This document shows positions 1,376 through 15,514 of a stretch of DNA of 62,000 nucleotides, in pieces. Every line of letters begins with the position of its first letter. Within the stretch, counting starts at the first letter, position 1. The position numbers and the translations under genes were made by a program. Below the pieces are notes generated by a model. The model was not told the DNA's origin and did not search any database. It saw only the letters and a program-made list of their open reading frames with translations. The DNA lies in the NCBI GenBank assembly GCA_951406725.2, contig OX597825.1:14900001-14962000 (forward strand). Direction: 5' to 3'. Source of the stretch: Octopus vulgaris (Eukaryota).

Positions 1376-1378
<3 letters not shown>

Positions 1379-1430
<52 letters not shown>
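1379..1430. repeat. (TA)n microsatellite
   Basis: Pure TA run. Confidence 0.95.
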
Positions 1431-1432
<2 letters not shown>

Positions 1433-1439
1433 AAGTAGA

Positions 1440-2600
1440 TAAATGAATAATCTTATTACGGATTATTCAAATGATAACCGACACCTGGGTAGCAAAAATC
1501 ACAACAGAAAAAGCACGGTTGAGGTTACGACCCTGGGGCCTAAAATCCGTGCCTTAGTGCGGAAATTTGAAGTTTTATATATTTAGTGTAGGAAGAAATG
1601 GAGCTGAACGAAGATTTAACAAAATTCCTTTTTATTATTTTCTACATATGTTTCAAAGGCTGCAAAGTCCCTAATTCGGATTGAATAAGGAGTCCATTTT
1701 GCAGCCTTCTCTTCAGGAAAGTCCAGGAACTTAATTCTCCAACAAAATGCACAGCAAGCTTTTCGACAAACGCTCACGAGGAGCCCATGGAATAAATGGC
1801 ACAAACTGTCTATCAATATGCGTTGACGCCAGGCTGGGTGAAAGCCGACGAGAAAGTCCGTTGAGATAATTCAAGGTCAAAATCCGGTTAACAGAAGGGG
1901 AGTACAGGAAAATCAAAGGGTGTGAATGTATTCTGTATGACTGGTGTTAATATTTGAATTGCTTTAAGAATGAGTGCTAGAGTGTTTGAGTGTGAGAAAT
2001 TGCTTTCATGTATGTGTGTGTGCATCTATGTATGTGTGGCAGTGTGTTTAGAAGGCAGCAAGGGAGAGAGATATAGCTGGTATTAATGGTCAAGCAACAG
2101 AAAAGTCTGTGTCTGTGTGTTCGTCTGTAACCAGTTGATAGAGAGAGGGTGTGTCAACAATGGTCATGGCAGGATACAGTGCTGCTGACAGGGATGTCAG
2201 CAGTTCTAGACAACTAGCAGTTCTTACACTAACAGGGGAGTGATATCCCCTTACAAATTTAATTCAATTTTTCTTCCATTTTCTTAGGAAATCAAGGGGT
2301 TAACTATATTAGACTTCATTGGTATGAGAGAAAAGTATGCCGTTTCCAGTGTGGGCATCTGAAAGAATTTTGCACAATCGAGTTAACAAGGTGCTCTCGG
2401 GCGAACAGAATATGAAAGAGTTCCGAGTTGCAAAGCGCACAGGTTTTTTTGCCCTTATCAAACGGTAAAGACACCGATAAAATTGAACATTCCAGTCTAA
2501 AAGTTGAATTCGCGTTCTTCAAACGCCAGAGTAATTTACTTAGGTAGGTTAGATCTTATGTGCAGTTTCGCCAAGCAATTGCCAGAAATTTCCCCCAGGT
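1440..2600 (-). mobile_element. Penelope-like retroelement 3' fragment (GIY-YIG C-terminus, 3' region, hammerhead)
   Basis: Minus-strand 2560-2316 translates LSKLLWRLKNANSTFRLECSILSVSLPFDKGKKTCALCNSELFHILFAREHLVNSIVQNSFRCPHWKRHTF, matching the PLE endonuclease tail pattern (LSKYIW.LK...C.LC..EK..IL...LN.....CRH); hammerhead downstream on the same strand; outer boundaries approximate. Confidence 0.7.
1639..1720 (-). ncRNA. Type I hammerhead ribozyme (Penelope-type, palindromic stem III)
   Basis: Minus strand: stem I TTTC / core CTGAAGA (1716-1710) / stem II G-U closure plus 11 perfect bp AAGGCTGCAAA:TTTGCAGCCTT / GAAA (1654-1651) / palindrome ACATATGT / GUA cleavage triplet (1645-1643) / stem I GAAA. 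Confidence 0.8.
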
Positions 2601-2913: not shown

Positions 2914-3200
2914 GAAAACGCATGGCTCAGCGGTTGGAGCGCCGAGCTTACGATCGTGAGGTTGGGAGTTCGAATCCCGGACAGGGCTGCGTGTTGTGTT
3001 CTTGAGCAAGACACTTTATTTCACGTTGCTCCAGTTCACTCAGTTGTGACGTCACAGGTTCCAAGCTGTATCTGCTGTTGCCTTGCCCTTGGATAACACT
3101 GGTGGCGTGGACAGGGGAGGCCGGTACGAAAGGGTGACTGGTGGTCTTCCATAAACAACCTTGCTTGGACTTGTGCCTGGGAGGGTAACTTTCTAGGTTG
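2914..3200 (+). mobile_element. tRNA-derived CORE-type SINE
   Basis: A box (tggctcagcggtt), B box (gagttcgaatccc), then CORE-like cttgagcaagacactttatttcacgttgctccagttcactcag. Confidence 0.75.
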
Positions 3201-3997
3201 GGTCTCAATATATATATATATGCGCGTTTTTGTGTAAGTTCGACCCTGTGTAATCATGGATTTTAAAAAAGAACTTTTAAGAACCTGAAGGAAATTATGT
3301 TCGCATTGATATCTTTAAAGAATCGGTAAAAGAAACGAAACATTTTATTTGTGTGTCTCAATCTACGTATATATACAATAGCGTTAGTGGAGTAGAATAG
3401 TTTCTGTAAAACGTTAATGTTTCCATTTTCGTATGTTGCCTCTTTTAAATTCGTTGCATTGTTAGTGAAATCATAAATTCATATTGGAAATCTTGCCAAC
3501 TCCATTTGAACATCACTGAACAGCGACATAGAAAATGCAAAACTTTGGTAAATTGGAAAAACTCCAACTTTAAACTGATAACAACTTAATTTCCATTAGC
3601 CAATAAGAACTGCAAAAACGTCTGGTAATGCAGTAGCAAGCAAAACCAATGTGAATATTTTGACATAGTCTTGTCAAAAAACATCTTCAAAAATATATCA
3701 GACTTTGTAAACAGAGAAAATATATTGCATTTAGATAAAAACAACATAGGAAATAAGGAAAATATTCGAATGGTGAGCATTAACGGTGTGAAATGCGAAA
3801 TTCGCAAAAATATATAGAATACGTCGAAAAATTGCAAAAGCGAAGATTTTCTGCTAACTATGCCCGTAATGAATTCGATCTCTACATGATTTTAAGAAAT
3901 ATTCGATTTTTTGTGTGTATCAAGTGAACTATTCTTTTCAAATAGCTTTAAATGCTTAAGTATAGCTGTAGGCGTTCGATATATAGTCAAACAATTT

Positions 3998-4036: not shown

Positions 4037-4265
4037 TGTTGGATATTATGTTAAATACTAACGGAAAATAGTCAGTCACATACACACACACACATGCGAC
4101 CACACACACACACACACACACTCATGCACACACTCTCTCACACACACAAAAACACCGCCTCACATACACATACACACGCTCACACACATATGCACGTATA
4201 TATAAATATATATACGTACAGACAAGTACATACATACATACATACACGCACTTACATGCAGTTCC

Positions 4266-4310
<45 letters not shown>

Positions 4311-4448
4311 ATACATATATATATATATATATACATACATATATATATATATATATACATACATATATATATATATACATACATATATATATATATACAT
4401 ACATATATATATATATACATACATATATATACATATATATATATATAA

Positions 4449-4485
<37 letters not shown>

Positions 4486-4540
4486 AATACATATATATAT
4501 ATATATATATGAATATATAAACATACATACATATATATTA

Positions 4541-4582
<42 letters not shown>

Positions 4583-4660
4583 TGTGTGTGTACATATGTA
4601 CACACACATATGTGCTTACATATAGTCATATATATAACATACACGAATAAGTTAAAATAA
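4000..4660. repeat. Compound (TA)n/(CA)n/(TACA)n microsatellite tract
   Basis: Direct inspection; source of the YI/HT-rich ORFs. Confidence 0.95.
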
Positions 4661-5033
4661 CATATATAATAGATACAGACTATAAGAGCTCAGACTGGAC
4701 TAGATACAGAAAATCTAACATCGAAGGAAGGGTGACGGAGTTCAAGCAAATAAGAGATAGCTACAGGCAATGTACCGGGCGATGTAATGAAACTATAATA
4801 TAATAAAAGATGGAAGGAAGGCGAGACGGTTGTAAATGGCATAAAATCATTTATGAAATATTTATAAAGAAGAGAGTAAAAATATATATGGAAATTAAGC
4901 AGCAAAACTGGAAAATCTGGAGAATAACTGCGTAGATTTTGTTTTATATTAAGATCTGTATAACTATCTAATCTATGATGTGCTCCAAATTAAAACTGCA
5001 TACATATACACGCATAGACAGAGAGGTTACATA

Positions 5034-5246: not shown

Positions 5247-7249
5247 TGTATACGTCCATACACATATTTGATCAGTTTAAATATCGTTTATTTTTAATGA
5301 AAAACTAACACAATAGCGTATTTAGTTATATAATATATCTCTGATACCCCAAACAAGAATGGCATGAATCAGATAATACTAGCGTATAGATATAGAACTA
5401 GATAAATTCCGTGCTGAACTGCTATGGAATCTTAAGAAGACATTACATAATACATCCAGCCTATATTTTCGAAACAAGCAAATGTTGCATTTTACTTGTA
5501 ACCAAAAATAGCATATGTGTATATTTAAGAATTGAATATCTACAGGAAAATTGCCAGCTTTAAAAAGATGTATGAAACTGTGTCAAATATAACAGAAATC
5601 TGATTGTTTGGTAAGCGGACGTTGATACAAATAAAACTCAACCCATAAGATGCTCCATACAGAATATTATAAACATACGCTCTCTTCCAAATTTCAGGTA
5701 TTTCGCTCTAATAGAAAGGACTATTATAATACACAATATTTTAACATTTTTTATGATACAATTCCTAATAATATTTAATTATGAAAATATATTAATATAT
5801 TTTAAACATCGAATGGCTACGGTGGTCCATCCGAGCGAAAAACAAATAAATAAATGGTGTCCATAGGTAAAAGAAATGATTGAGAAACACCGGTGAAGGT
5901 GAACGTTAGACTGCCACTAATCAATCTTGGATGAAAAGTTGAAGTACATATAACGTTATATACATGACTTATATTCAGTGCAAGACACGGACATCCGTCT
6001 TACGAAATGTCGTTTGCGTTATGGTTGAAGGATAGAAATCCTACAAGACGTTATAGTGAACGTATGCAGTTATAGAGATACTAACATTTTACTGCCTATA
6101 TATTATTAAATATGTCATCTATCTTTTGACAGAATGATTCTAAGTGGAGTAGTATCAAGGATATGTGCATATGTATTTGTGTGTGTGTCTGTGTCTGTGT
6201 CTGTGTGCGCGTGTTTATGTAATACGAATAATAGGATAATTACCGTGCACGGATATGATGTAACTGAAATATCAAATGATTTTATGACAGCAGACATGTT
6301 GTACTCAATTGTAGTGAAATGTCCGGCATTGCGATGGAAATGATAATTCGAACATTTACGCCATTTCATTAGTGAAGAATATATGAAGAACTTATTTAAG
6401 ATAATAAAGAAACGAAAATATTATCTTCCCTTAATTAAGAGTTTATCTTCTACGTAATGACAGTTGCTCAAACTCATTTGGAATCGTAGCCAGAAGATAT
6501 TCAGTGACAAGTAGATTTAGAAAAAAAAAAATCAATTATTACAAATGCTTATTCTTCCAATGGCAAAGTCGCAAACAGGTAATTCAGCAATTTTTTTTTC
6601 TATTGTAAAGTGGTACCACGGTTGTGTTTACGCCACGTATGACTCCATTATTGCTATCACAGGTTTTGATGTCCTTCGAGGCGTTTTACTTCACTGCCTT
6701 CTGACAATAATAAAGAAATAAACGCAAGAAAGCGTACAACATAACTTTTAGATCTCTTGAAGTAATTTATATTCAAAGAAAGTCCATTTCACCGAAATGT
6801 CAACATTGTCTAACGTGTTCATTTATAACAACGTTTGAAGGTTTCTTTATGAAGACACAAAGGGAAAAGTGCATCACATAATTAGACAATAAAATATTCT
6901 ACCCTCTCACAACTCTACAAATCTAATGTTGTTTAAATACATATAAATTGTTCACAGGTCGATAAATTGTTCACATTTTCGTTTCATCTGTATTTCTGTA
7001 TTCTTATTCATATATATATGGATTTTTATGAGAAGAATATTATTACTCTAAACGTATTTTACGCGAAGTATATGCTGAAATTATTCATGCTAAATGTAAT
7101 GATGCATGCATAGTGTTGGATATAATTATATGTGAATTTATAAAATTTTATTTGCACGTATATACATATGTGTAAGCTTGTATACACTGATATACAATTG
7201 TCATAGAAATATGTGTATAACTTTACATGTGATTGCCTGTATGTGCCTT

Positions 7250-7250
7250 T

Positions 7251-7340
<90 letters not shown>

Positions 7341-7342
7341 TA
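7250..7342. repeat. (TA)n microsatellite
   Basis: Direct inspection. Confidence 0.95.
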
Positions 7343-8289
7343 ATTGGTTAATGAGAGACGGAAGATCGAAGACACGAGAACTTTAATTAATCATTACAAT
7401 TGTTTCAACACGAGGTATGTTTTGTATTTTGGTATTTGAGAATGTAACAATCCAATAGGTATAGACGATTAGTTTTATTATCTAATAATATATATATTTA
7501 TCACGTCTTACACAGCAGCTTTGAGGCCGCCTATTACATGTCACTCATTCGACGTTTACATCTTCGACATTTCTGTCCCTTAGAACCTCTCTTTCTCTTT
7601 ATCGTTGTTTATACGCGCAAATTTCTGTACGCGTGTGTGTTTGCATGTGTACCAAAAGTACTATCGCCAAAACACGTCAACCTGGCCAAATCGTCGACAT
7701 CCAAACTGCCGCGCCAAACCTGCTCATTCCGTTTTGGGCAGATGGTATCAAAAGCAATAGTTTTGTGCCAATCACTCTTTATGTCAGTGGTGACTAACGC
7801 GCCATTTCTGAAACAATAATTTGTAATAACTCCTGCGCTCATTTACCACAAGAAATTTGCATCGTGGTTTAGGAGATTGAATATACTCCAATCTTTGTTA
7901 AATAGGCAACAGAGCACTTCTATAGTCATCTGAATATATAATCGCACTTAGACACCAAATAGAAGACCATTTCATGCATGCATCATTTACCAAATTTCTC
8001 TAAGCTCTAATAAAATTATTCTGGCTTACAATTTTTGTTAAAAACTGACATTTTCTCAGATACCATTGATAAATATCTTACAACATTCGTACTTATGATT
8101 TTTCTTTTATTTACTCAAATATAATCTTTTGTCAGTTATTGAGGGCGTTTAGATTATCACTGTAGCGTAACTAGGCTAAAAGATGTATTGCATTTTGTTA
8201 TCGGCGGTCTGTATCTAGCAATATACATGAGCTGATGGACCTCATCATACTATAAACTGATGTTTTGAAGCCTAACGATGTTATAAATG

Positions 8290-11200
8290 TAGAGTTACCT
8301 TGCAACTCCAGGATCTTTTTCTGTCTTCTGCACTATAGAACCCCGGCGAAAAAAATTAAGGAGCTCGGACAGAGAGCAGAAATGAGAAATATTAATAAAT
8401 ATGTAACTGCAACATCAAACCTGCTCTGAAGACTGAGTTCCTTTATTTCACAATCGTGCACATTTAAATTCCCTTCCATTTTCAAACACATTATTTGACA
8501 TGCGTATTTAAAACTTCCTTATGATACACTACCATACCAAATTCCCCAAACCTTTTAGAGCAGGCCCTATCATACATTAAAGAGTTCCACTTGCGACGAA
8601 TCGACAGTGTATGTTCTATGCAAAAACGTTGTTTAGTCTTTCTTTTCGACTTTTGATTTGATGCTGGAAGCTGAAATATAGAGTTCACGTTTTAGGAGCT
8701 TCATCAGCTTCACAGAATAAATTCTGTTTTCAGAGGTCCTATGCTTGTTGTAGGCAATTTTCTGCATAGCATGGATAAGCTGAATACTTGTTACTGTTTG
8801 GGAATCTGATTCTGATGATATTAAATGGAGGAATTATTTTTCTTGAATGGAAAATTTTAAATTCCTCCGGCACCATTCATACTTCGCACTGATTTGTACC
8901 CGCGATATTTTTGTTTGTTACTTCTCGAGCCACGCCTGGCTCATATGGGCCGGTTTCCCAGTTTCCTTGGTGTATAGGTTCCCTACCTGGACGGGACGCC
9001 AGTCTTTCGCAGATGAGCTGCAAGATGCAGGAGGAAAGCGCGAGAGAAATTTGTAGCGAAAGAGTCAGCAAAAGTTCGCCATTACCTTCTGCCGGAGCCG
9101 CGTGGAGCTTAGGTGATTCGCTCATAAACACACATCGCTAGGTCTGAGATTCGAACTCACGATCCCTCGACCGCCAGTCCGCTGCCCTAACCACTAGGCC
9201 ATGTGCCTCCACACCCGCGATATTGAGCGAAAATCGTTCCTCTTCCCTGTTCCAACGAGATTACGGAATATGTGTGCGTTTGAATAAATGCTATTATAGG
9301 TATTTGATGTCTTTAACTGATAGACAGATTTCAGCAGTGATTGGGTTTTCGCAATTCTAAAGTAACCAAGCATTGTAGGGAATATCGTGTCCATTACGTA
9401 AGGAGATATTTCTAACTCCAACAATATCAGTATTACTTTATTAGTAGGACTTTGGGAAAATAGTGTGGATAGCTTAATATTTGTGAATGGAAATGTCACT
9501 CGTGGGTGTAATTCAAACTATATTTTCCCATTCACATGCGCAGTAAAGTCGTATGCAGTTCTCTCCGATGCTTGTGTTATTTGATTGTGCATTCCGGCAG
9601 AAATAGCTCTATCGATTTCTTTCTATATGCTGTGATCGTTTTCTAATTTAAAGTGAAAACACCAATGAGGTAAACATGTTTCTCGTCTTCAATAATACAA
9701 CGTTCATCATGATTCCTTAAGCGTCGTATTCGAAATCCTGTTGATGTTGATCCCAATTCAACTTGAAAAGTCGTTCACTTATAAGAGGACGATCTGCAAC
9801 CGTTTGATGTTCACTGAATTGACTTGTGAGGTCTTCGCAATTTAGTTTGTAGGTGAGTGTCACAAATAATGCTAGTTTCCCAAAGTTCTACAAAATGACT
9901 TGCAACGTGCCATAGGATCTTGTCAAATGTCACAGTAGATGGTAATTTCATGTAGCACCGTGTAAACATTCACTTGTATCATCATCACCGCCTTTACCAA
10001 AGCATTTTACATATCTAATTTTAAATATTGTCGGTAGTTTCGAATATTGTGCAAACGAGCAGATTGGTATTAGGCGTATTGGTATAGAAAATAACTCTTT
10101 AATCGATGGTGTCGGTTACACGATTTATTACCTGAATCATCTATGTCTATTATCTCAAAAGAATACAATTGGAGAGACGCCATTTTCTCAAATGCGTATT
10201 TCCTTCAGTGCATTGAGATGTCATCCATCTAAGTTGCCAGGAAAGTATGGATATATAACAGGACATATTCTTTGTAAAATTCGCTAAACATTTGAATACA
10301 TGGCTGATAGCTCTCTGCATTGAACTTATCAAATTTGTTGCAAGGTGACGATTTTCATCGCCAATGTCAGGTAAGTCATATCTTCGCGGCTAATATCTTC
10401 TCAGCAAATCATACCTTCTCGGCAAATCACAACATTTCGGCAAGTCACCACTTCTCGGCATGTCATACCTTTTTCTAAAGAATTAACCATCTGGAATGTT
10501 GTCAACGTGCAATCCAATAGAAACATTTACTGGTTTTTGTCAGCATAAATTTCTTTGACAGATTTTCTTTCAAATACCTTTTTGTTAGCGGAAGGCATAA
10601 CAGATTGAAGCGTACCTGATATACCATCAATATTGTCTATTTCTTTACCTGCAGGGAATTTCTGCAAATTTTGAAGCAGTTCTTTAGAACGGTAACATCA
10701 AATTTGCAGACAGGATATTGCCACTGTAATAGCATTTCTTTCTTTTGCAAAATAATCTATAAGCAACTTCTTGAATTCTGCAAGGTTAAACTGCCTCGAA
10801 CAACTATAGGAACGTTTGATTTTAAGTTCCACACGGTCATAGTAAAGTTGAAGCTCCAAATGTTTCTTCTCAAACATTTTGCTTCTAGTGAATCAATTAT
10901 GAGCATTTGATGTAGCTGAAGAGGTAAACCTGGTACGTCTGAAATATGGATAAACTCAGATATATAGTAAATAATAAAATCGAGATTGCCGAATGGTCTT
11001 CTAGTGCAGTCTCTCATGAATATCAATGCATTAAAACGACGGCATTTCACGTCCATTAAGCTGGAACACTGACGGGTTACATTGACAGCGAATTCCATTA
11101 CCGAGGCTATGTTATATTGCTTTGCAGCATTCATCATCTAATTTTGTCAGTTTTGAAGATTAATCCATTCTATGCTATTAGTTCGGGTGTTTGTTCTTGA

Positions 11201-14187: not shown

Positions 14188-15514
14188 ATGCATGCTTCTG
14201 CTAATTTATGTGTGTGTTTATCTTACTCTACGTATGTGTAACCAGCTGATACTTACTGAGCCAAAAAAAAGGGGGGTTACTACAAGAGAAAATATAGAAA
14301 TGTAATTACGACCGTAATTTATCGGATTGTTAACGGAATCTATGATATGTACATTGAAGAAATACTTTTTATTCAGAATATGTTTCTATTGATGTTCCAA
14401 AATTAAAAGTTGTCTTATTCCTGAATATGAATATAAACATGAACTGAATTTAAACAAGAAATCTTTACTTCCAAAGGAATTGTTACAGGTTAGATAGAAA
14501 TATAATTTTTTTTTTGTTTATTTAAATAGTTCCTCCAGTAGCGTTCGCCATATTGAGTTGACATTAGAAACGAGCTCACTGATCCAATTATCAAAAATCG
14601 ATATGCGGCTGCTATTTTTCACTTGTCAATAATTCCTCCGTGGTGTCTTATCTACAATAGGAATTACATTCTCACGTAGACTATAGTTCCGTTATTCGAA
14701 TCATACATGTCTACGAATTACTGAGTTTGATATTTCTTTGGAAGTTTGTTACAGTTTAGATATGTACAAATTGTCTCGTTTTTATGTTAGAAGAATAGTA
14801 TTGCTCCTTACATTTCGATCGAAGAATATTATTGTTCTCTTTTCGATCGTAATAAATACGATAGAAGATATTACTTAATCGTACCAACTTGTAGGCTTTA
14901 TATGGTTTAACAGCAGTTTATTATAAATTATTAAAATTCCTGTATTTCAGTGTAGATCAGATTTATAACGAGCAAATTTCAGATATCTTAAATAGTTTTG
15001 CTTTACAAAAGTGTGTGCAATAATATAAATGTATACCGGTATATAGGCTAGCATACAATATCGTTCTAAGGCCTGCCAAACAGAAAGACGTCACCAGCAT
15101 CCGGTCCAGCCACCCAGTTCAAAAAATTTCCGTTGTATTGCATTTAATGTTGCTGACATGATGACCTCGCTTCTAACAACTCCTTGTGGCCAGCCTTCAA
15201 CAGTAGCAGCCAAGCATATGGCCGCCGTCTCTATTCGGTTATCAAAGCCTGAATGCGCTGGTTCTCAGTAAGAAGCCTATGAAATTGTGTGTCAGTGCGT
15301 GCACGAGGGCGTGGGTGTTTTGTGTGTATGTCTTTAGTTTTAAACAATATAACTTAAGGATAGGCATCTTCAAGCTTTCAATTCTTGCTTTATATATTCA
15401 CTGAGTGGATATACAAATGAAAAGAAGCGCTGATTTACCTGCTACCGAACGGAAACGAGGAGCTATAGGTACTATAAATTGGAGCGATTTGGTTAGAATA
15501 TATTAAAGAATACC

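What the first reader, a model, noticed from the sequence alone, without database searches (positions are those of the whole stretch)
1639..1720. Hammerhead ribozyme with an intact core and unusually long stem II, downstream of a Penelope endonuclease
Seen: on the minus strand all conserved core positions are present (C3 U4 G5 A6 A7 G8 A9; G12 A13 A14; A15.1-U16.1; GUA cleavage site between 1643 and 1642). Stem I has 4 bp. Stem II has a G-U closure, 11 perfect bp and a further imperfect extension (~55 nt in total). Stem III is the loopless palindrome ACATATGT. Established: Penelope-like elements carry type I hammerheads whose palindromic stem III folds best as a dimer. Inference: this copy may still self-cleave in any minus-strand transcript, although no intact partner copy is visible in this window. 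The small ORF at 1616-1816 is only a translation across this RNA.
Basis: partly seen in the sequence, partly recalled or inferred. Interest (0 to 1): 0.8.

Follow-up and report, generated by a model that had tools for sequence, protein, structure and literature searches.

The report
Retrotransposon hammerhead ribozyme, solo relic copy
This is a genuine hammerhead-ribozyme motif in the tail of a broken copy of a Penelope-like retrotransposon that has thousands of copies in this animal genome: a known kind of element, notable only for an unusually long second helix, and probably inert in this copy.

Summary
On the minus strand, 1722-1637 holds a type I hammerhead: CUGAAGA, GAAA, A15.1-U16.1 and GUA, with cleavage between 1643 and 1642. 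Helix II is 55 nt (G.U closure plus 11 Watson-Crick pairs). Helix III is the 8-nt palindrome ACAUAUGU.

It is not chance. A descriptor gives 0.023 hits per shuffled window. A core-anchored pattern finds 3,049 genomic copies against 0 for the reversed control. The core is invariant across sister families, whose helix II shows changes on both sides of four pairs.

The motif lies about 600 nt after the stop codon of a 1.1-kb, 5'-truncated copy (2543-1431) of a Hydra-clade Penelope-like element, inserted next to (TA)26. Only the last 77 codons of the endonuclease survive.

Rfam finds nothing, even at E<=10.

This copy differs from its family consensus by U2.5 to C, which cuts helix I from 6 to 4 bp. 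It has no partner copy in the window. Folding predicts that the consensus forms a double hammerhead as a dimer; the window copy keeps only the intermolecular helix III. Self-cleavage is untested.

A 62-nt helix II also occurs in an Argonauta hians relative, so the long helix II is a lineage trait.

Verdict: new member of a known kind, of modest interest.

The parts
1637..1722 (-).
   Evidence: Read directly. Custom covariance model R1 scores 115 bits, E 2e-30.
1717..1722 (-). Helix I 5' strand, A2.6 C2.5 U U U C2.1. C1721 replaces the consensus U and breaks pair 2.5-1.5.
   Evidence: 33 loci copies carry GGATTTTC; the window carries GGACTTTC.
1710..1716 (-). Core C3 U4 G5 A6 A7 G8 A9 (CUGAAGA)
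   Evidence: Invariant in all 14 sequences of alignment A1, spanning six sister families.
1655..1709 (-). Helix II, 55 nt. Proximal 12 pairs are 1709-1698 with 1655-1666 (G10.1.U11.1 plus 11 Watson-Crick pairs). The distal imperfect hairpin is 1697-1667.
   Evidence: Proximal helix: 92.3% of cells paired and 4 pairs with changes on both sides (variant table). Distal part: sequence-conserved, no covariation.
1651..1654 (-). Core G12 A13 A14 A15.1 (GAAA)
   Evidence: Invariant across families.
1644..1651 (-). Helix III palindrome ACAUAUGU (A15.1 to U16.1). As a monomer it gives at most 2 bp plus an AUAU loop; between two copies it gives 8 bp.
   Evidence: Sister families have ACACGUGU or ACAUGUGU, and the central pair is always pairable: CG 3, UG 7, UA 4. 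The cofold minimum-free-energy structure uses it as an intermolecular helix.
1642..1643 (-). Predicted scissile bond: 3' of A17 (1643), 5' of G1.1 (1642)
   Evidence: Hammerhead numbering applied to the sequence. One family variant has C17, which is also permitted.
1637..1642 (-). Helix I 3' strand, G1.1 A A A A U1.6
1576..1636 (-). Conserved block between the hammerhead and the 'short' 3' end used by one arm of most insertions
   Evidence: Cross-family identity is 0.81-0.85 over the hammerhead and the next ~70 nt, then falls to about 0.5. Most copies in L002-L030 end at 1576.
1431..1575 (-). 'Tail': a 145-nt extension present only in long-end arms. The window copy has it.
1431..2543 (-). The whole 5'-truncated element copy, 1,113 bp
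   Evidence: 92.5-97% identical to longer copies L043, L044, L057 and L058 over exactly this span.
2316..2549 (-). Remnant of the element ORF: the last 77 codons of the endonuclease plus the stop codon
   Evidence: tblastn of the 904-aa ORF of L057: residues 828-904, 91% identity, E 3e-38. The CxxC, E, N and CxH motifs are present.
1378..1430 (.). (TA)26 microsatellite abutting the element's 3' end: the insertion target
   Evidence: The same (TA)n abuts the ends of other copies. (TA)n is the target reported for the Hydra clade.
2561..2595 (+). 35-nt fragment of the element ORF in inverted orientation, 17 nt beyond the truncation point
   Evidence: 97% identical to L057 3206-3240.

Best explanation
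The feature is the terminal hammerhead of a Hydra-clade Penelope-like retrotransposon (PLE). It sits in a dead-on-arrival copy that is 5'-truncated to 1.1 kb and inserted next to a (TA)n microsatellite.

Layout of the intact element (shown): a unit of about 3.6 kb made of a 45-nt 5'UTR, a 904-codon ORF (reverse transcriptase plus GIY-YIG endonuclease), about 600 nt of 3'UTR, the hammerhead, 66 nt to the short 3' end, and a further 145-nt tail. In tandem arrays the hammerhead therefore also lies about 300 nt upstream of the next ORF, in the position of a pseudo-LTR.

Likely mechanism (inferred from published work on PLE, newt and axolotl hammerheads and from folding): helix III cannot close as a hairpin. 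A single copy is therefore catalytically poor. Two copies, in a tandem transcript or in two separate RNAs, pair their palindromes into an 8-bp helix III and swap helix I strands. This builds two active sites that cut after A17 and leave 2',3'-cyclic phosphate and 5'-OH ends.

A constraint that follows from the layout (inferred): both cDNA start sites (1576 and 1431) lie 3' of the cut. Every genomic copy that contains the hammerhead was therefore copied from RNA uncut, or religated, at that site. This fits a motif kept inactive as a monomer.

This particular copy (inferred): it has no promoter-bearing upstream repeat, no partner copy and a mismatch in helix I. It is most likely an inert relic.
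For: - Motif anatomy read directly.
- Chance rate 0.023 per shuffled window.
- 3,049 genomic matches against 0 for the reversed control. The window's own subfamily 27-mer has 475 matches.
- All 12 core columns (CUGAAGA, GAAA, U16.1) are invariant across six sister families, while 40 of the 98 alignment columns vary. The only change at position 17 is A to C, which is permitted.
- Helix II: 92% of cells paired and 4 pairs with changes on both sides. The covariation score is 0.178, against 0.125+/-0.011 in shuffles (0 of 500 reach it) and at most 0.074 with slid partners.
- Cross-family conservation peaks on the hammerhead and the next ~70 nt.
- Element identity: a 904-aa ORF with the DKT, RW, FDIxxFYPSI and YRDD motifs and a C-terminal Y..YxG..R..E..N endonuclease flanked by CxxC and CxH, matching the published Hydra-clade diagnosis. 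The AlphaFold model (pLDDT 74.8) is closest to telomerase reverse transcriptases.
- (TA)n target, 5' truncation, inverted pairs, a tail and 3,625-bp tandem arrays.
- Cofold of two consensus copies gives the double hammerhead with swapped helix I, 8.6 kcal/mol below two monomers. The window variant loses helix I in the predicted structure.
- Relatives elsewhere carry hammerheads in the same position: Argonauta hians has two copies 3,217 nt apart flanking the ORF, and two environmental contigs also have them.
Against: - No Rfam hammerhead model matches, even at E<=10 on 101 nt.
- The 10.1-11.1 pair is G.U, not the near-universal G-C. [quoted passage not shown]
- All helix changes are CpG-decay-type transitions (CG to TG or CA) that pass through G.U intermediates, and the families share one genome. 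The covariation is therefore weaker evidence than the counts suggest.
- I found no genomic footprint of in vivo cleavage. On contig C1, 24 of the 27 copies that hold the 30-mer just downstream of the cut also span the cut. Insertions at the cut site number 3 against 0 at a control split, and two of the 3 are slippage duplications.
- One inverted pair carries G17, which is non-cleavable, in both arms and was still inserted.
- Published PLE hammerheads cleave poorly in vitro. Catalytic mutants did not affect insertion by a Poseidon element (PMC4209133, PMC11167929).
Confidence: 0.8

Rival explanations
1. The conserved block (hammerhead with its long helix II plus the next ~66 nt) serves mainly as the RNA handle that the element's reverse transcriptase recognises to start cDNA synthesis internally at 1576 and 1431. 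On this reading, catalysis is dispensable or vestigial. This rival is compatible with the motif being a true hammerhead by descent.
For: - Conservation peaks over the hammerhead and the downstream block up to the short 3' end.
- The distal helix II is conserved in sequence, not by covariation.
- Every cDNA start lies 66 or 211 nt 3' of the cut site, so templates must be uncut.
- A G17 variant was transposed.
- The youngest subfamily carries G.U at 10.1-11.1 in about 82 of 100 listed copies.
- In Poseidon from Anolis, the RNA needed for insertion includes the hammerhead region, reverse transcription starts about 90 nt downstream of the cut, and ribozyme-dead mutants insert normally (PMC11167929).
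Against: All 13 catalytic-core positions are invariant across families, including G5, G8 and G12, which have no obvious role in a simple protein-binding hairpin. The palindromic helix III is maintained through CG, UG and UA states. No binding data exist for any Hydra-clade element.
Confidence: 0.3
2. One reading: this solo copy is still an active ribozyme that cuts any minus-strand transcript crossing it, for example a host read-through RNA.
For: The core is intact, helix II is perfect, and 4 bp of helix I remain. At least 3,049 related copies could in principle supply a partner RNA in trans.
Against: - Helix III cannot close in a monomer: the hammerhead fold scores -13 kcal/mol against a minimum free energy of -23.7.
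- There is no second copy in 62 kb.
- The C1721 mismatch removes helix I from the predicted dimer.
- The 10.1-11.1 pair is G.U.
- Published PLE mini-hammerheads show no detectable monomer cleavage.
- No evidence of minus-strand transcription is available here.
Confidence: 0.1
3. The motif is a chance match to a permissive hammerhead descriptor in AT-rich DNA.
For: Rfam finds no hit. The loose pattern CTGANGA..GAAAC occurs by chance about 0.5 times per window.
Against: The full descriptor gives 0.023 hits per shuffled window. The family pattern has 3,049 copies against 0 for the control. The position within the element is conserved across families and in another genus.
Confidence: 0.01

Closest known systems
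Minimal type I hammerheads of Penelope-like elements (Cervera and De la Pena 2014, PMC4209133)
   Same: They sit in the element's terminal repeat region. Helix I is short, helix II is enlarged, and helix III is palindromic so that function requires a dimer. [quoted passage not shown]
   Different: Helix II here is 12 bp plus an extension (55 nt), against 6-8 bp. [quoted passage not shown] This subfamily has G.U rather than G-C at 10.1-11.1.
Hydra-clade PLEs and their hammerheads (Craig et al. 2021, PMC8557442)
   Same: The protein shares DKT, RW(K), a C-terminal GIY-YIG without CCHH, and CxxC and CxH around the conserved E and N. The target is (TA)n. The insertions show inverted and tandem arrangements and a tail. 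The clade has been reported in Mollusca, and canonical hammerheads are 'readily detected' in it.
   Different: This family has replaced the CxCX5C linker with an Asn/Ser-rich low-complexity stretch. The unit is 3.6 kb, against the usual <3 kb. The tail is 145 nt, against 30-40 nt. Two non-octopod relatives have helix II of only 12 and 23 nt.
Dimer-dependent type I hammerheads of newt and axolotl satellite DNA and animal retrozymes (PMC7229834; Forster et al. 1988, cited in PMC6765202)
   Same: Helix III is weak with a palindromic centre, and the double-hammerhead mechanism applies.
   Different: Those motifs have closed loops 1 and 2 with tertiary contacts, and they sit in 170-400-bp tandem repeats. 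Here helix I is open, helix II is long, and the carrier is an autonomous element usually inserted as inverted pairs.
Poseidon PAc hammerhead and internal initiation of reverse transcription (Frangieh et al. 2024, PMC11167929)
   Same: The hammerhead lies a few tens of nucleotides upstream of two internal reverse-transcription start sites that define the 'tail'. Both target strands are extended, which matches the inverted two-arm insertions seen here.
   Different: In PAc the motif overlaps the ORF start and the two start sites are 30-40 nt apart. Here they are 145 nt apart, and each insertion unit shows one end of each kind.
Rfam hammerhead models (queried as part of all 4,227 Rfam 15 families)
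   Same: Same core and the same three-helix junction.
   Different: No match at any threshold tried. I attribute this to the 55-nt helix II and the loopless helix III, but I did not test that attribution.

Membership tests
Hammerhead ribozyme, type I | Core nucleotides C3 U4 G5 A6 N7 G8 A9, G12 A13 A14, A15.1-U16.1, and H17 (not G) | tested here: met
   All are present at 1716-1710, 1654-1651 and 1644-1643. They are invariant across six sister families.
Hammerhead ribozyme, type I | Three helices around the core, with helix I open | tested here: met
   Helix I is 4 bp here and 6 bp in the consensus. Helix II is 12 bp. Helix III is 2 bp plus a tetraloop as a monomer, or 8 bp between two copies.
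Hammerhead ribozyme, type I | G10.1-C11.1 closing pair of helix II | tested here: not met
   The window has G1709.U1655. C11.1 is present in sister families and in 18 of the first 100 listed subfamily copies. The U is a CpG-type C-to-T change.
Hammerhead ribozyme, type I | Helices supported by compensatory changes | tested here: met
   In helix II, 4 of 12 pairs change on both sides. The covariation score exceeds all 500 shuffles and all slid controls. Caveat: all changes are CpG-decay transitions within one genome.
Hammerhead ribozyme, type I | Match to a curated covariance model (Rfam) | tested here: not met
   There is no hammerhead hit at the gathering threshold or at E<=10 on 601 or 101 nt, and none in five related loci.
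Hammerhead ribozyme, type I | Site-specific self-cleavage giving 2',3'-cyclic phosphate and 5'-OH ends | not testable with these tools
   No wet assay or RNA-end data are available. The indirect genomic footprint tests were negative or n=1.
Hammerhead ribozyme, type I | Loop 1 - loop 2 tertiary contact for activity at physiological Mg2+ | tested here: inconclusive
   Helix I has no closed loop. Helix II ends in a 31-nt imperfect hairpin with conserved sequence. No known contact motif can be assigned.
PLE minimal hammerhead (Cervera and De la Pena 2014) | Located in the terminal or pseudo-LTR region of a Penelope-like element | tested here: met
   It lies about 600 nt after the stop codon and about 300 nt before the next ORF in 3,625-bp tandem arrays.
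PLE minimal hammerhead (Cervera and De la Pena 2014) | Palindromic positions 15.2-16.2 and loop 3; enlarged helix II; short helix I | tested here: met
   Helix III is ACAUAUGU, ACACGUGU or ACAUGUGU. Helix II is 12 bp. Helix I is 3-6 bp.
PLE minimal hammerhead (Cervera and De la Pena 2014) | [quoted passage not shown] | tested here: not met
   A9 (1710) is followed directly by G10.1 (1709), which pairs with U or C at 11.1 in all families.
Penelope-like element, Hydra clade | Reverse transcriptase of the telomerase-like kind | tested here: met
   The AlphaFold model of the 904-aa ORF of L057 (pLDDT 74.8, pTM 0.72) has telomerase reverse transcriptases as its top Foldseek hits, E 3e-10 to 1e-8. 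Pfam and PDB sequence searches found nothing.
Penelope-like element, Hydra clade | C-terminal GIY-YIG endonuclease | tested here: met
   Y787, Y800-x-G802, R811, E870 and N883 are invariant in 21 homologues. The model has a beta-beta-alpha-alpha-beta-alpha topology at 783-875. Pfam GIY-YIG is the top family but weak: 3 of 21 members, best E 0.0011. In the window itself only residues 828-904 survive.
Penelope-like element, Hydra clade | Clade markers: DKT, RWK, no CCHH, CxxC and CxH flanking E and N, CxCX5C linker | tested here: inconclusive
   DKT, RW(L), CALC..E..N..C(T/P)H are present. The homologues have CNCRxxxxC, but this genome's family has lost it to an Asn/Ser-rich insert.
Penelope-like element, Hydra clade | Insertion into (TA)n; 5' truncation; inverted or tandem arrangement; one-sided tail | tested here: met

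The most novel reading that the evidence does not exclude
In octopod Hydra-clade Penelope-like elements, the hammerhead has been remodelled into a larger 3'-terminal module. This module comprises the 55-62-nt helix II with its sequence-conserved tip, the G.U closure, and the next ~66 nt. Its main job would be to position the element's reverse transcriptase for internal initiation at two sites 145 nt apart. One site would be used on each target strand, so that each insertion becomes an inverted two-arm unit with one short and one long end. Ribozyme cleavage would be only a secondary or regulatory activity.
Probability: 0.25. Interest if true: 0.5.

Novelty: new member of a known kind. Interest (0 to 1): 0.27.

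Why it matters
Hammerheads in Penelope-like elements are known, but their role in retrotransposition is still unresolved.

This genome offers a young, abundant family: at least 475 near-identical copies of the window's subfamily and at least 3,049 in the superfamily. It contains natural variants at informative positions, namely U or C at 11.1, G17, and helix I mismatches. It also shows a clean genomic signature of two cDNA start sites just downstream of the ribozyme.

That makes the family convenient for testing whether cleavage, dimerisation or protein binding is the selected function.

It also shows that Rfam-based annotation misses this whole class, so cephalopod genome annotations will lack thousands of ribozyme motifs.

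For the window itself the result is ordinary. It is a dead transposon fragment with no sign of host function.

Tried and rejected
- Rfam at the gathering threshold on the window, and at E<=10 on 601 and 101 nt: no hammerhead hit. The only hits were spurious: Plastid-psbA on the plus strand, which is just the long hairpin, and snoR23.
- Rfam on five related loci: only microsatellite-driven miRNA false hits.
- Pfam on the ORF fragments and on the 904-aa ORF: nothing.
- First homologue search over residues 150-904: it failed, probably because of low-complexity words. It worked over residues 1-500.
- PDB sequence-profile search: no hit.
- My first regex descriptor missed true copies because of lazy matching. 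I replaced it with an exhaustive one.
- Footprint of in vivo cleavage. A pile-up of 5' truncations at G1.1 was not seen: 24 of 27 copies on contig C1 span the site, and the other 3 are explained by a G17 mutation (2 copies) or an 8-nt insert (1 copy). Insertions exactly at the cut site number 3 against 0 at a control split, but 2 of the 3 are slippage. The result is inconclusive.
- Marginal model hits at window 10904-10978 and 14217-14297, and the descriptor hit at 8812-8863: chance level.
- Supplementary files of Craig et al. 2021 and the Lunse et al. paper are not held. I therefore could not check whether this exact family or its helix II length has already been published.
- I did not build a full-length consensus of the element.
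Full report
**Observation.** The minus strand of window 1722-1637 reads A-C-UUUC / CUGAAGA / GAAGGCUGCAAA...UUUGCAGCCUUU / GAAA / CAUAUG / U-A | GAAAAU.
- C3-A9 at 1716-1710;
- G12-A14 at 1654-1652;
- A15.1 at 1651, U16.1 at 1644, A17 at 1643, G1.1 at 1642.

Helix II spans 1709-1655 (55 nt). It is closed by G1709.U1655, followed by 11 Watson-Crick pairs and an imperfect distal hairpin. Helix III is the 8-nt palindrome ACAUAUGU.

**Not a chance match.** An exhaustive descriptor (core, helix II >=4 bp, helix III >=2 bp, helix I >=3 bp) finds this site and one weak 4-bp site in the 62-kb window. It gives 0.023 hits per first-order-Markov shuffled window. The looser core-only pattern is uninformative, with 0.5 hits expected.

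**Rfam.** No hammerhead family matches at the gathering threshold on the whole window, or at E<=10 on 601 or 101 nt. Rfam also finds none of the other hammerhead-like motifs in five related loci. The negative result therefore reflects model coverage rather than the quality of this motif. A covariance model built from the family (R1) finds exactly one copy in the window (115 bits, E 2e-30); the next hits have E 0.56 and 1.

**What carries it.** The window comes from a 2.8-Gb genome in 227 contigs.
- A 161-nt query centred on the motif finds dozens of copies at 98-99% identity.
- Homology to longer copies runs from window 2543 to 1431, where a (TA)26 microsatellite begins.
- The upstream end of the copy encodes the last 77 residues and the stop codon of a long ORF (window 2549-2316; tblastn 91% identity, E 3e-38).
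- An intact 904-codon ORF is seen in L057.
- Pfam and PDB sequence searches are silent on that ORF.
- Its 35-43%-identical homologues align with these invariant motifs: RW(K), DKT, FDIxxFYPSI, MGSxD, YRDD, then Y..YxG..R..H and CxxC-E...N...CxH at the C-terminus.
- This is the published diagnosis of the Hydra clade of Penelope-like elements, which also insert into (TA)n and carry hammerheads (PMC8557442).
- An AlphaFold model (pLDDT 74.8) has telomerase reverse transcriptases as its best structural matches.
- Pfam GIY-YIG is the commonest, though weak, family among the homologues.
- The closest named homologue is from Argonauta hians. I infer, but have not shown, that the host is a cephalopod.

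However, the window keeps only the C-terminal third of the nuclease, without the GIY and YIG motifs.

**Family-level evidence for the ribozyme.**
- The pattern CCTGAAGAGN{48,60}GAAACAYRTGTAGAA occurs 3,049 times in the genome and its reversed control 0 times. The window's own subfamily 27-mer occurs 475 times.
- I sampled loci chosen only by reverse-transcriptase similarity (80-94% amino-acid identity). Seventeen of 20 carry the motif at the same distance after the stop codon.
- Across six sister families the 12 core columns never vary, while 40 of the 98 alignment columns do. The one change at position 17 is A to C, which a hammerhead tolerates.
- The proximal helix II is 92% paired, and four of its pairs change on both sides (AU/GC, UA/CG/UG, GC/AU/GU, AU/UA). 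The covariation score of 0.178 exceeds all 500 shuffles (0.125+/-0.011) and all slid controls (<=0.074). A larger hand-collected set shows the same pattern.
- The centre of helix III cycles through CG, UG and UA and is always pairable.

Two cautions apply. All these changes are CpG-decay transitions that pass through G.U, and the families share ancestry in one genome. The distal helix II is conserved in sequence but not by covariation.

**How this copy differs.** The family consensus has a 6-bp helix I (AUUUUC/GAAAAU). The window has C at 1721, which creates a C.A mismatch at pair 2.5-1.5.

The window's subfamily has U at 11.1, giving G.U. Sister families and 18 of the first 100 listed subfamily copies have the canonical C.

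ViennaRNA cofolding of two consensus copies gives the double hammerhead as the minimum-free-energy structure. It has an 8-bp intermolecular helix III and swapped helix I strands, and it lies 8.6 kcal/mol below two monomers. With the window sequence, helix I drops out. As a monomer, the hammerhead fold is about 9-11 kcal/mol worse than the minimum free energy.

No second copy lies in the window.

**Architecture of insertions.**
- Most insertion units are head-to-head pairs of 5'-truncated arms. One arm ends at window-equivalent 1576 and the other at 1431; both abut (TA)n.
- Tandem arrays with a 3,625-bp period have no microsatellite between units. They place the hammerhead about 300 nt upstream of the next start codon.
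- Cross-family identity peaks (0.81-0.85) over the hammerhead and the following ~70 nt, that is, up to the short end.
- This mirrors the biochemistry of a Poseidon element: two internal reverse-transcription start sites downstream of the hammerhead define the 'tail', both target strands are extended, and ribozyme-dead mutants still insert (PMC11167929).
- Both start sites lie 3' of the scissile bond, so every copy containing the hammerhead was templated by RNA uncut or religated there. This step is inference.

**Search for a footprint of cleavage in vivo.** On contig C1, 24 of the 27 copies holding the 30-mer immediately downstream of the cut also span the cut. Of the three exceptions:
- two are an inverted pair sharing G17, a non-cleavable variant that was nevertheless inserted;
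- one has an 8-nt insert exactly between A17 and G1.1.

Genome-wide, insertions at that junction number 3, two of them slippage duplications, against 0 at a control split. This is inconclusive.

**Is the long helix II special?** Published PLE mini-hammerheads have 6-8 bp. Two Hydra-clade relatives from environmental assemblies have helix II of 12 and 23 nt. The Argonauta hians relative has a 62-nt helix II, again closed by G.U, and an 8-nt palindromic helix III (ACAAUUGU); two copies 3,217 nt apart flank its ORF. A second, unrelated hammerhead family in this genome (in L007) also has a 51-nt helix II. The long helix II is thus a lineage trait of these elements, not a peculiarity of this copy.

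**Verdict.** The motif is a bona fide PLE hammerhead in a dead, solo, slightly damaged copy. It is a new member of a known kind. Its activity is untested and is probably nil for this copy on its own.

Noticed in passing
L002-L030 (for example L018 1238-1830, L002 1312-1830); window 1431-1576: Insertion units of this element are typically head-to-head pairs of 5'-truncated arms, with one arm ending at window-equivalent 1576 and the other at 1431. The 'tail' is therefore 145 nt, not the 30-40 nt described for other PLEs, and each unit seems to use one start site of each kind. The two arms are often truncated at nearly the same position (1800/1800 in L018; 1796/1795 in L015).
   Followed up: partly
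window 2561-2595 (+): A 35-nt piece of the element's ORF (equivalent to L057 3206-3240) sits in inverted orientation 17 nt beyond the 5' truncation point of the window copy. It looks like a template-switch remnant rather than a normal partner arm.
   Followed up: partly
L082 and L083 (G000:C1:219915150-219915350 and 219916100-219916260): Both arms of this inverted pair carry G at position 17 (GUG|G), which a hammerhead cannot cleave. Both arms therefore came from the same variant RNA, and that RNA was still retrotransposed.
   Followed up: partly
L081 (G000:C1:58556440-58556740), about locus 160-175: One copy has an 8-nt insert (ATGATAAT) exactly between A17 and G1.1, the predicted cut site. 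This could be a template jump across cleaved ends, but it is a single case. A genome-wide pattern search found only 3 insertions at this site, 2 of them slippage duplications.
   Followed up: yes
L057 ORF residues ~635-779 (L057 ~3365-3800); alignment A3: This genome's family has replaced the CxCX5C zinc-finger linker that precedes the endonuclease in its homologues with a ~145-residue Asn/Ser-rich low-complexity stretch (pLDDT <50). It nevertheless has hundreds of young copies that still insert next to (TA)n, even though that linker has been proposed to confer the microsatellite targeting.
   Followed up: partly
L007 2778-2872 (-) and 2242-2336 (-) (G000:C20:20564559-20567719): A different hammerhead-like motif is present twice, 536 nt apart on the same strand: UUUUGG CUGACGA, a 51-nt helix II closed by G-C, then GAAAC AAUU GUC CCAAAA. 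It is retrozyme-like or belongs to another PLE pseudo-LTR. Rfam does not detect it.
   Followed up: no
L084 2161-2242 and 5378-5459 (Argonauta hians BAAFZT010000013.1): The Argonauta relative of the element has hammerhead motifs 3,217 nt apart flanking its ORF. Helix II is 62 nt with a G.U closure, and helix III is ACAAUUGU. Its helix I is very weak.
   Followed up: partly
L059 and L060 (G000:C1:119515000-119524900; C3:111169000-111177500): A sister family forms perfect tandem arrays with a 3,625-bp period, intact 899-codon ORFs, and no microsatellite between units. This is compatible with more-than-unit-length or circular templates.
   Followed up: partly
window 2926-3198: An unrelated repeat, about 82% identical to stretches in L020 and L022, lies just upstream of the element. 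It translates as ...SELEQREIKCLAQEHN... and also appears in L044. It was not identified.
   Followed up: no
window 4055-4690 and 7059-7382: Long compound microsatellites (TA, CA/TG, and TATG-type) dominate the neighbourhood. They produce spurious long ORFs and spurious Rfam miRNA hits in related loci.
   Followed up: no
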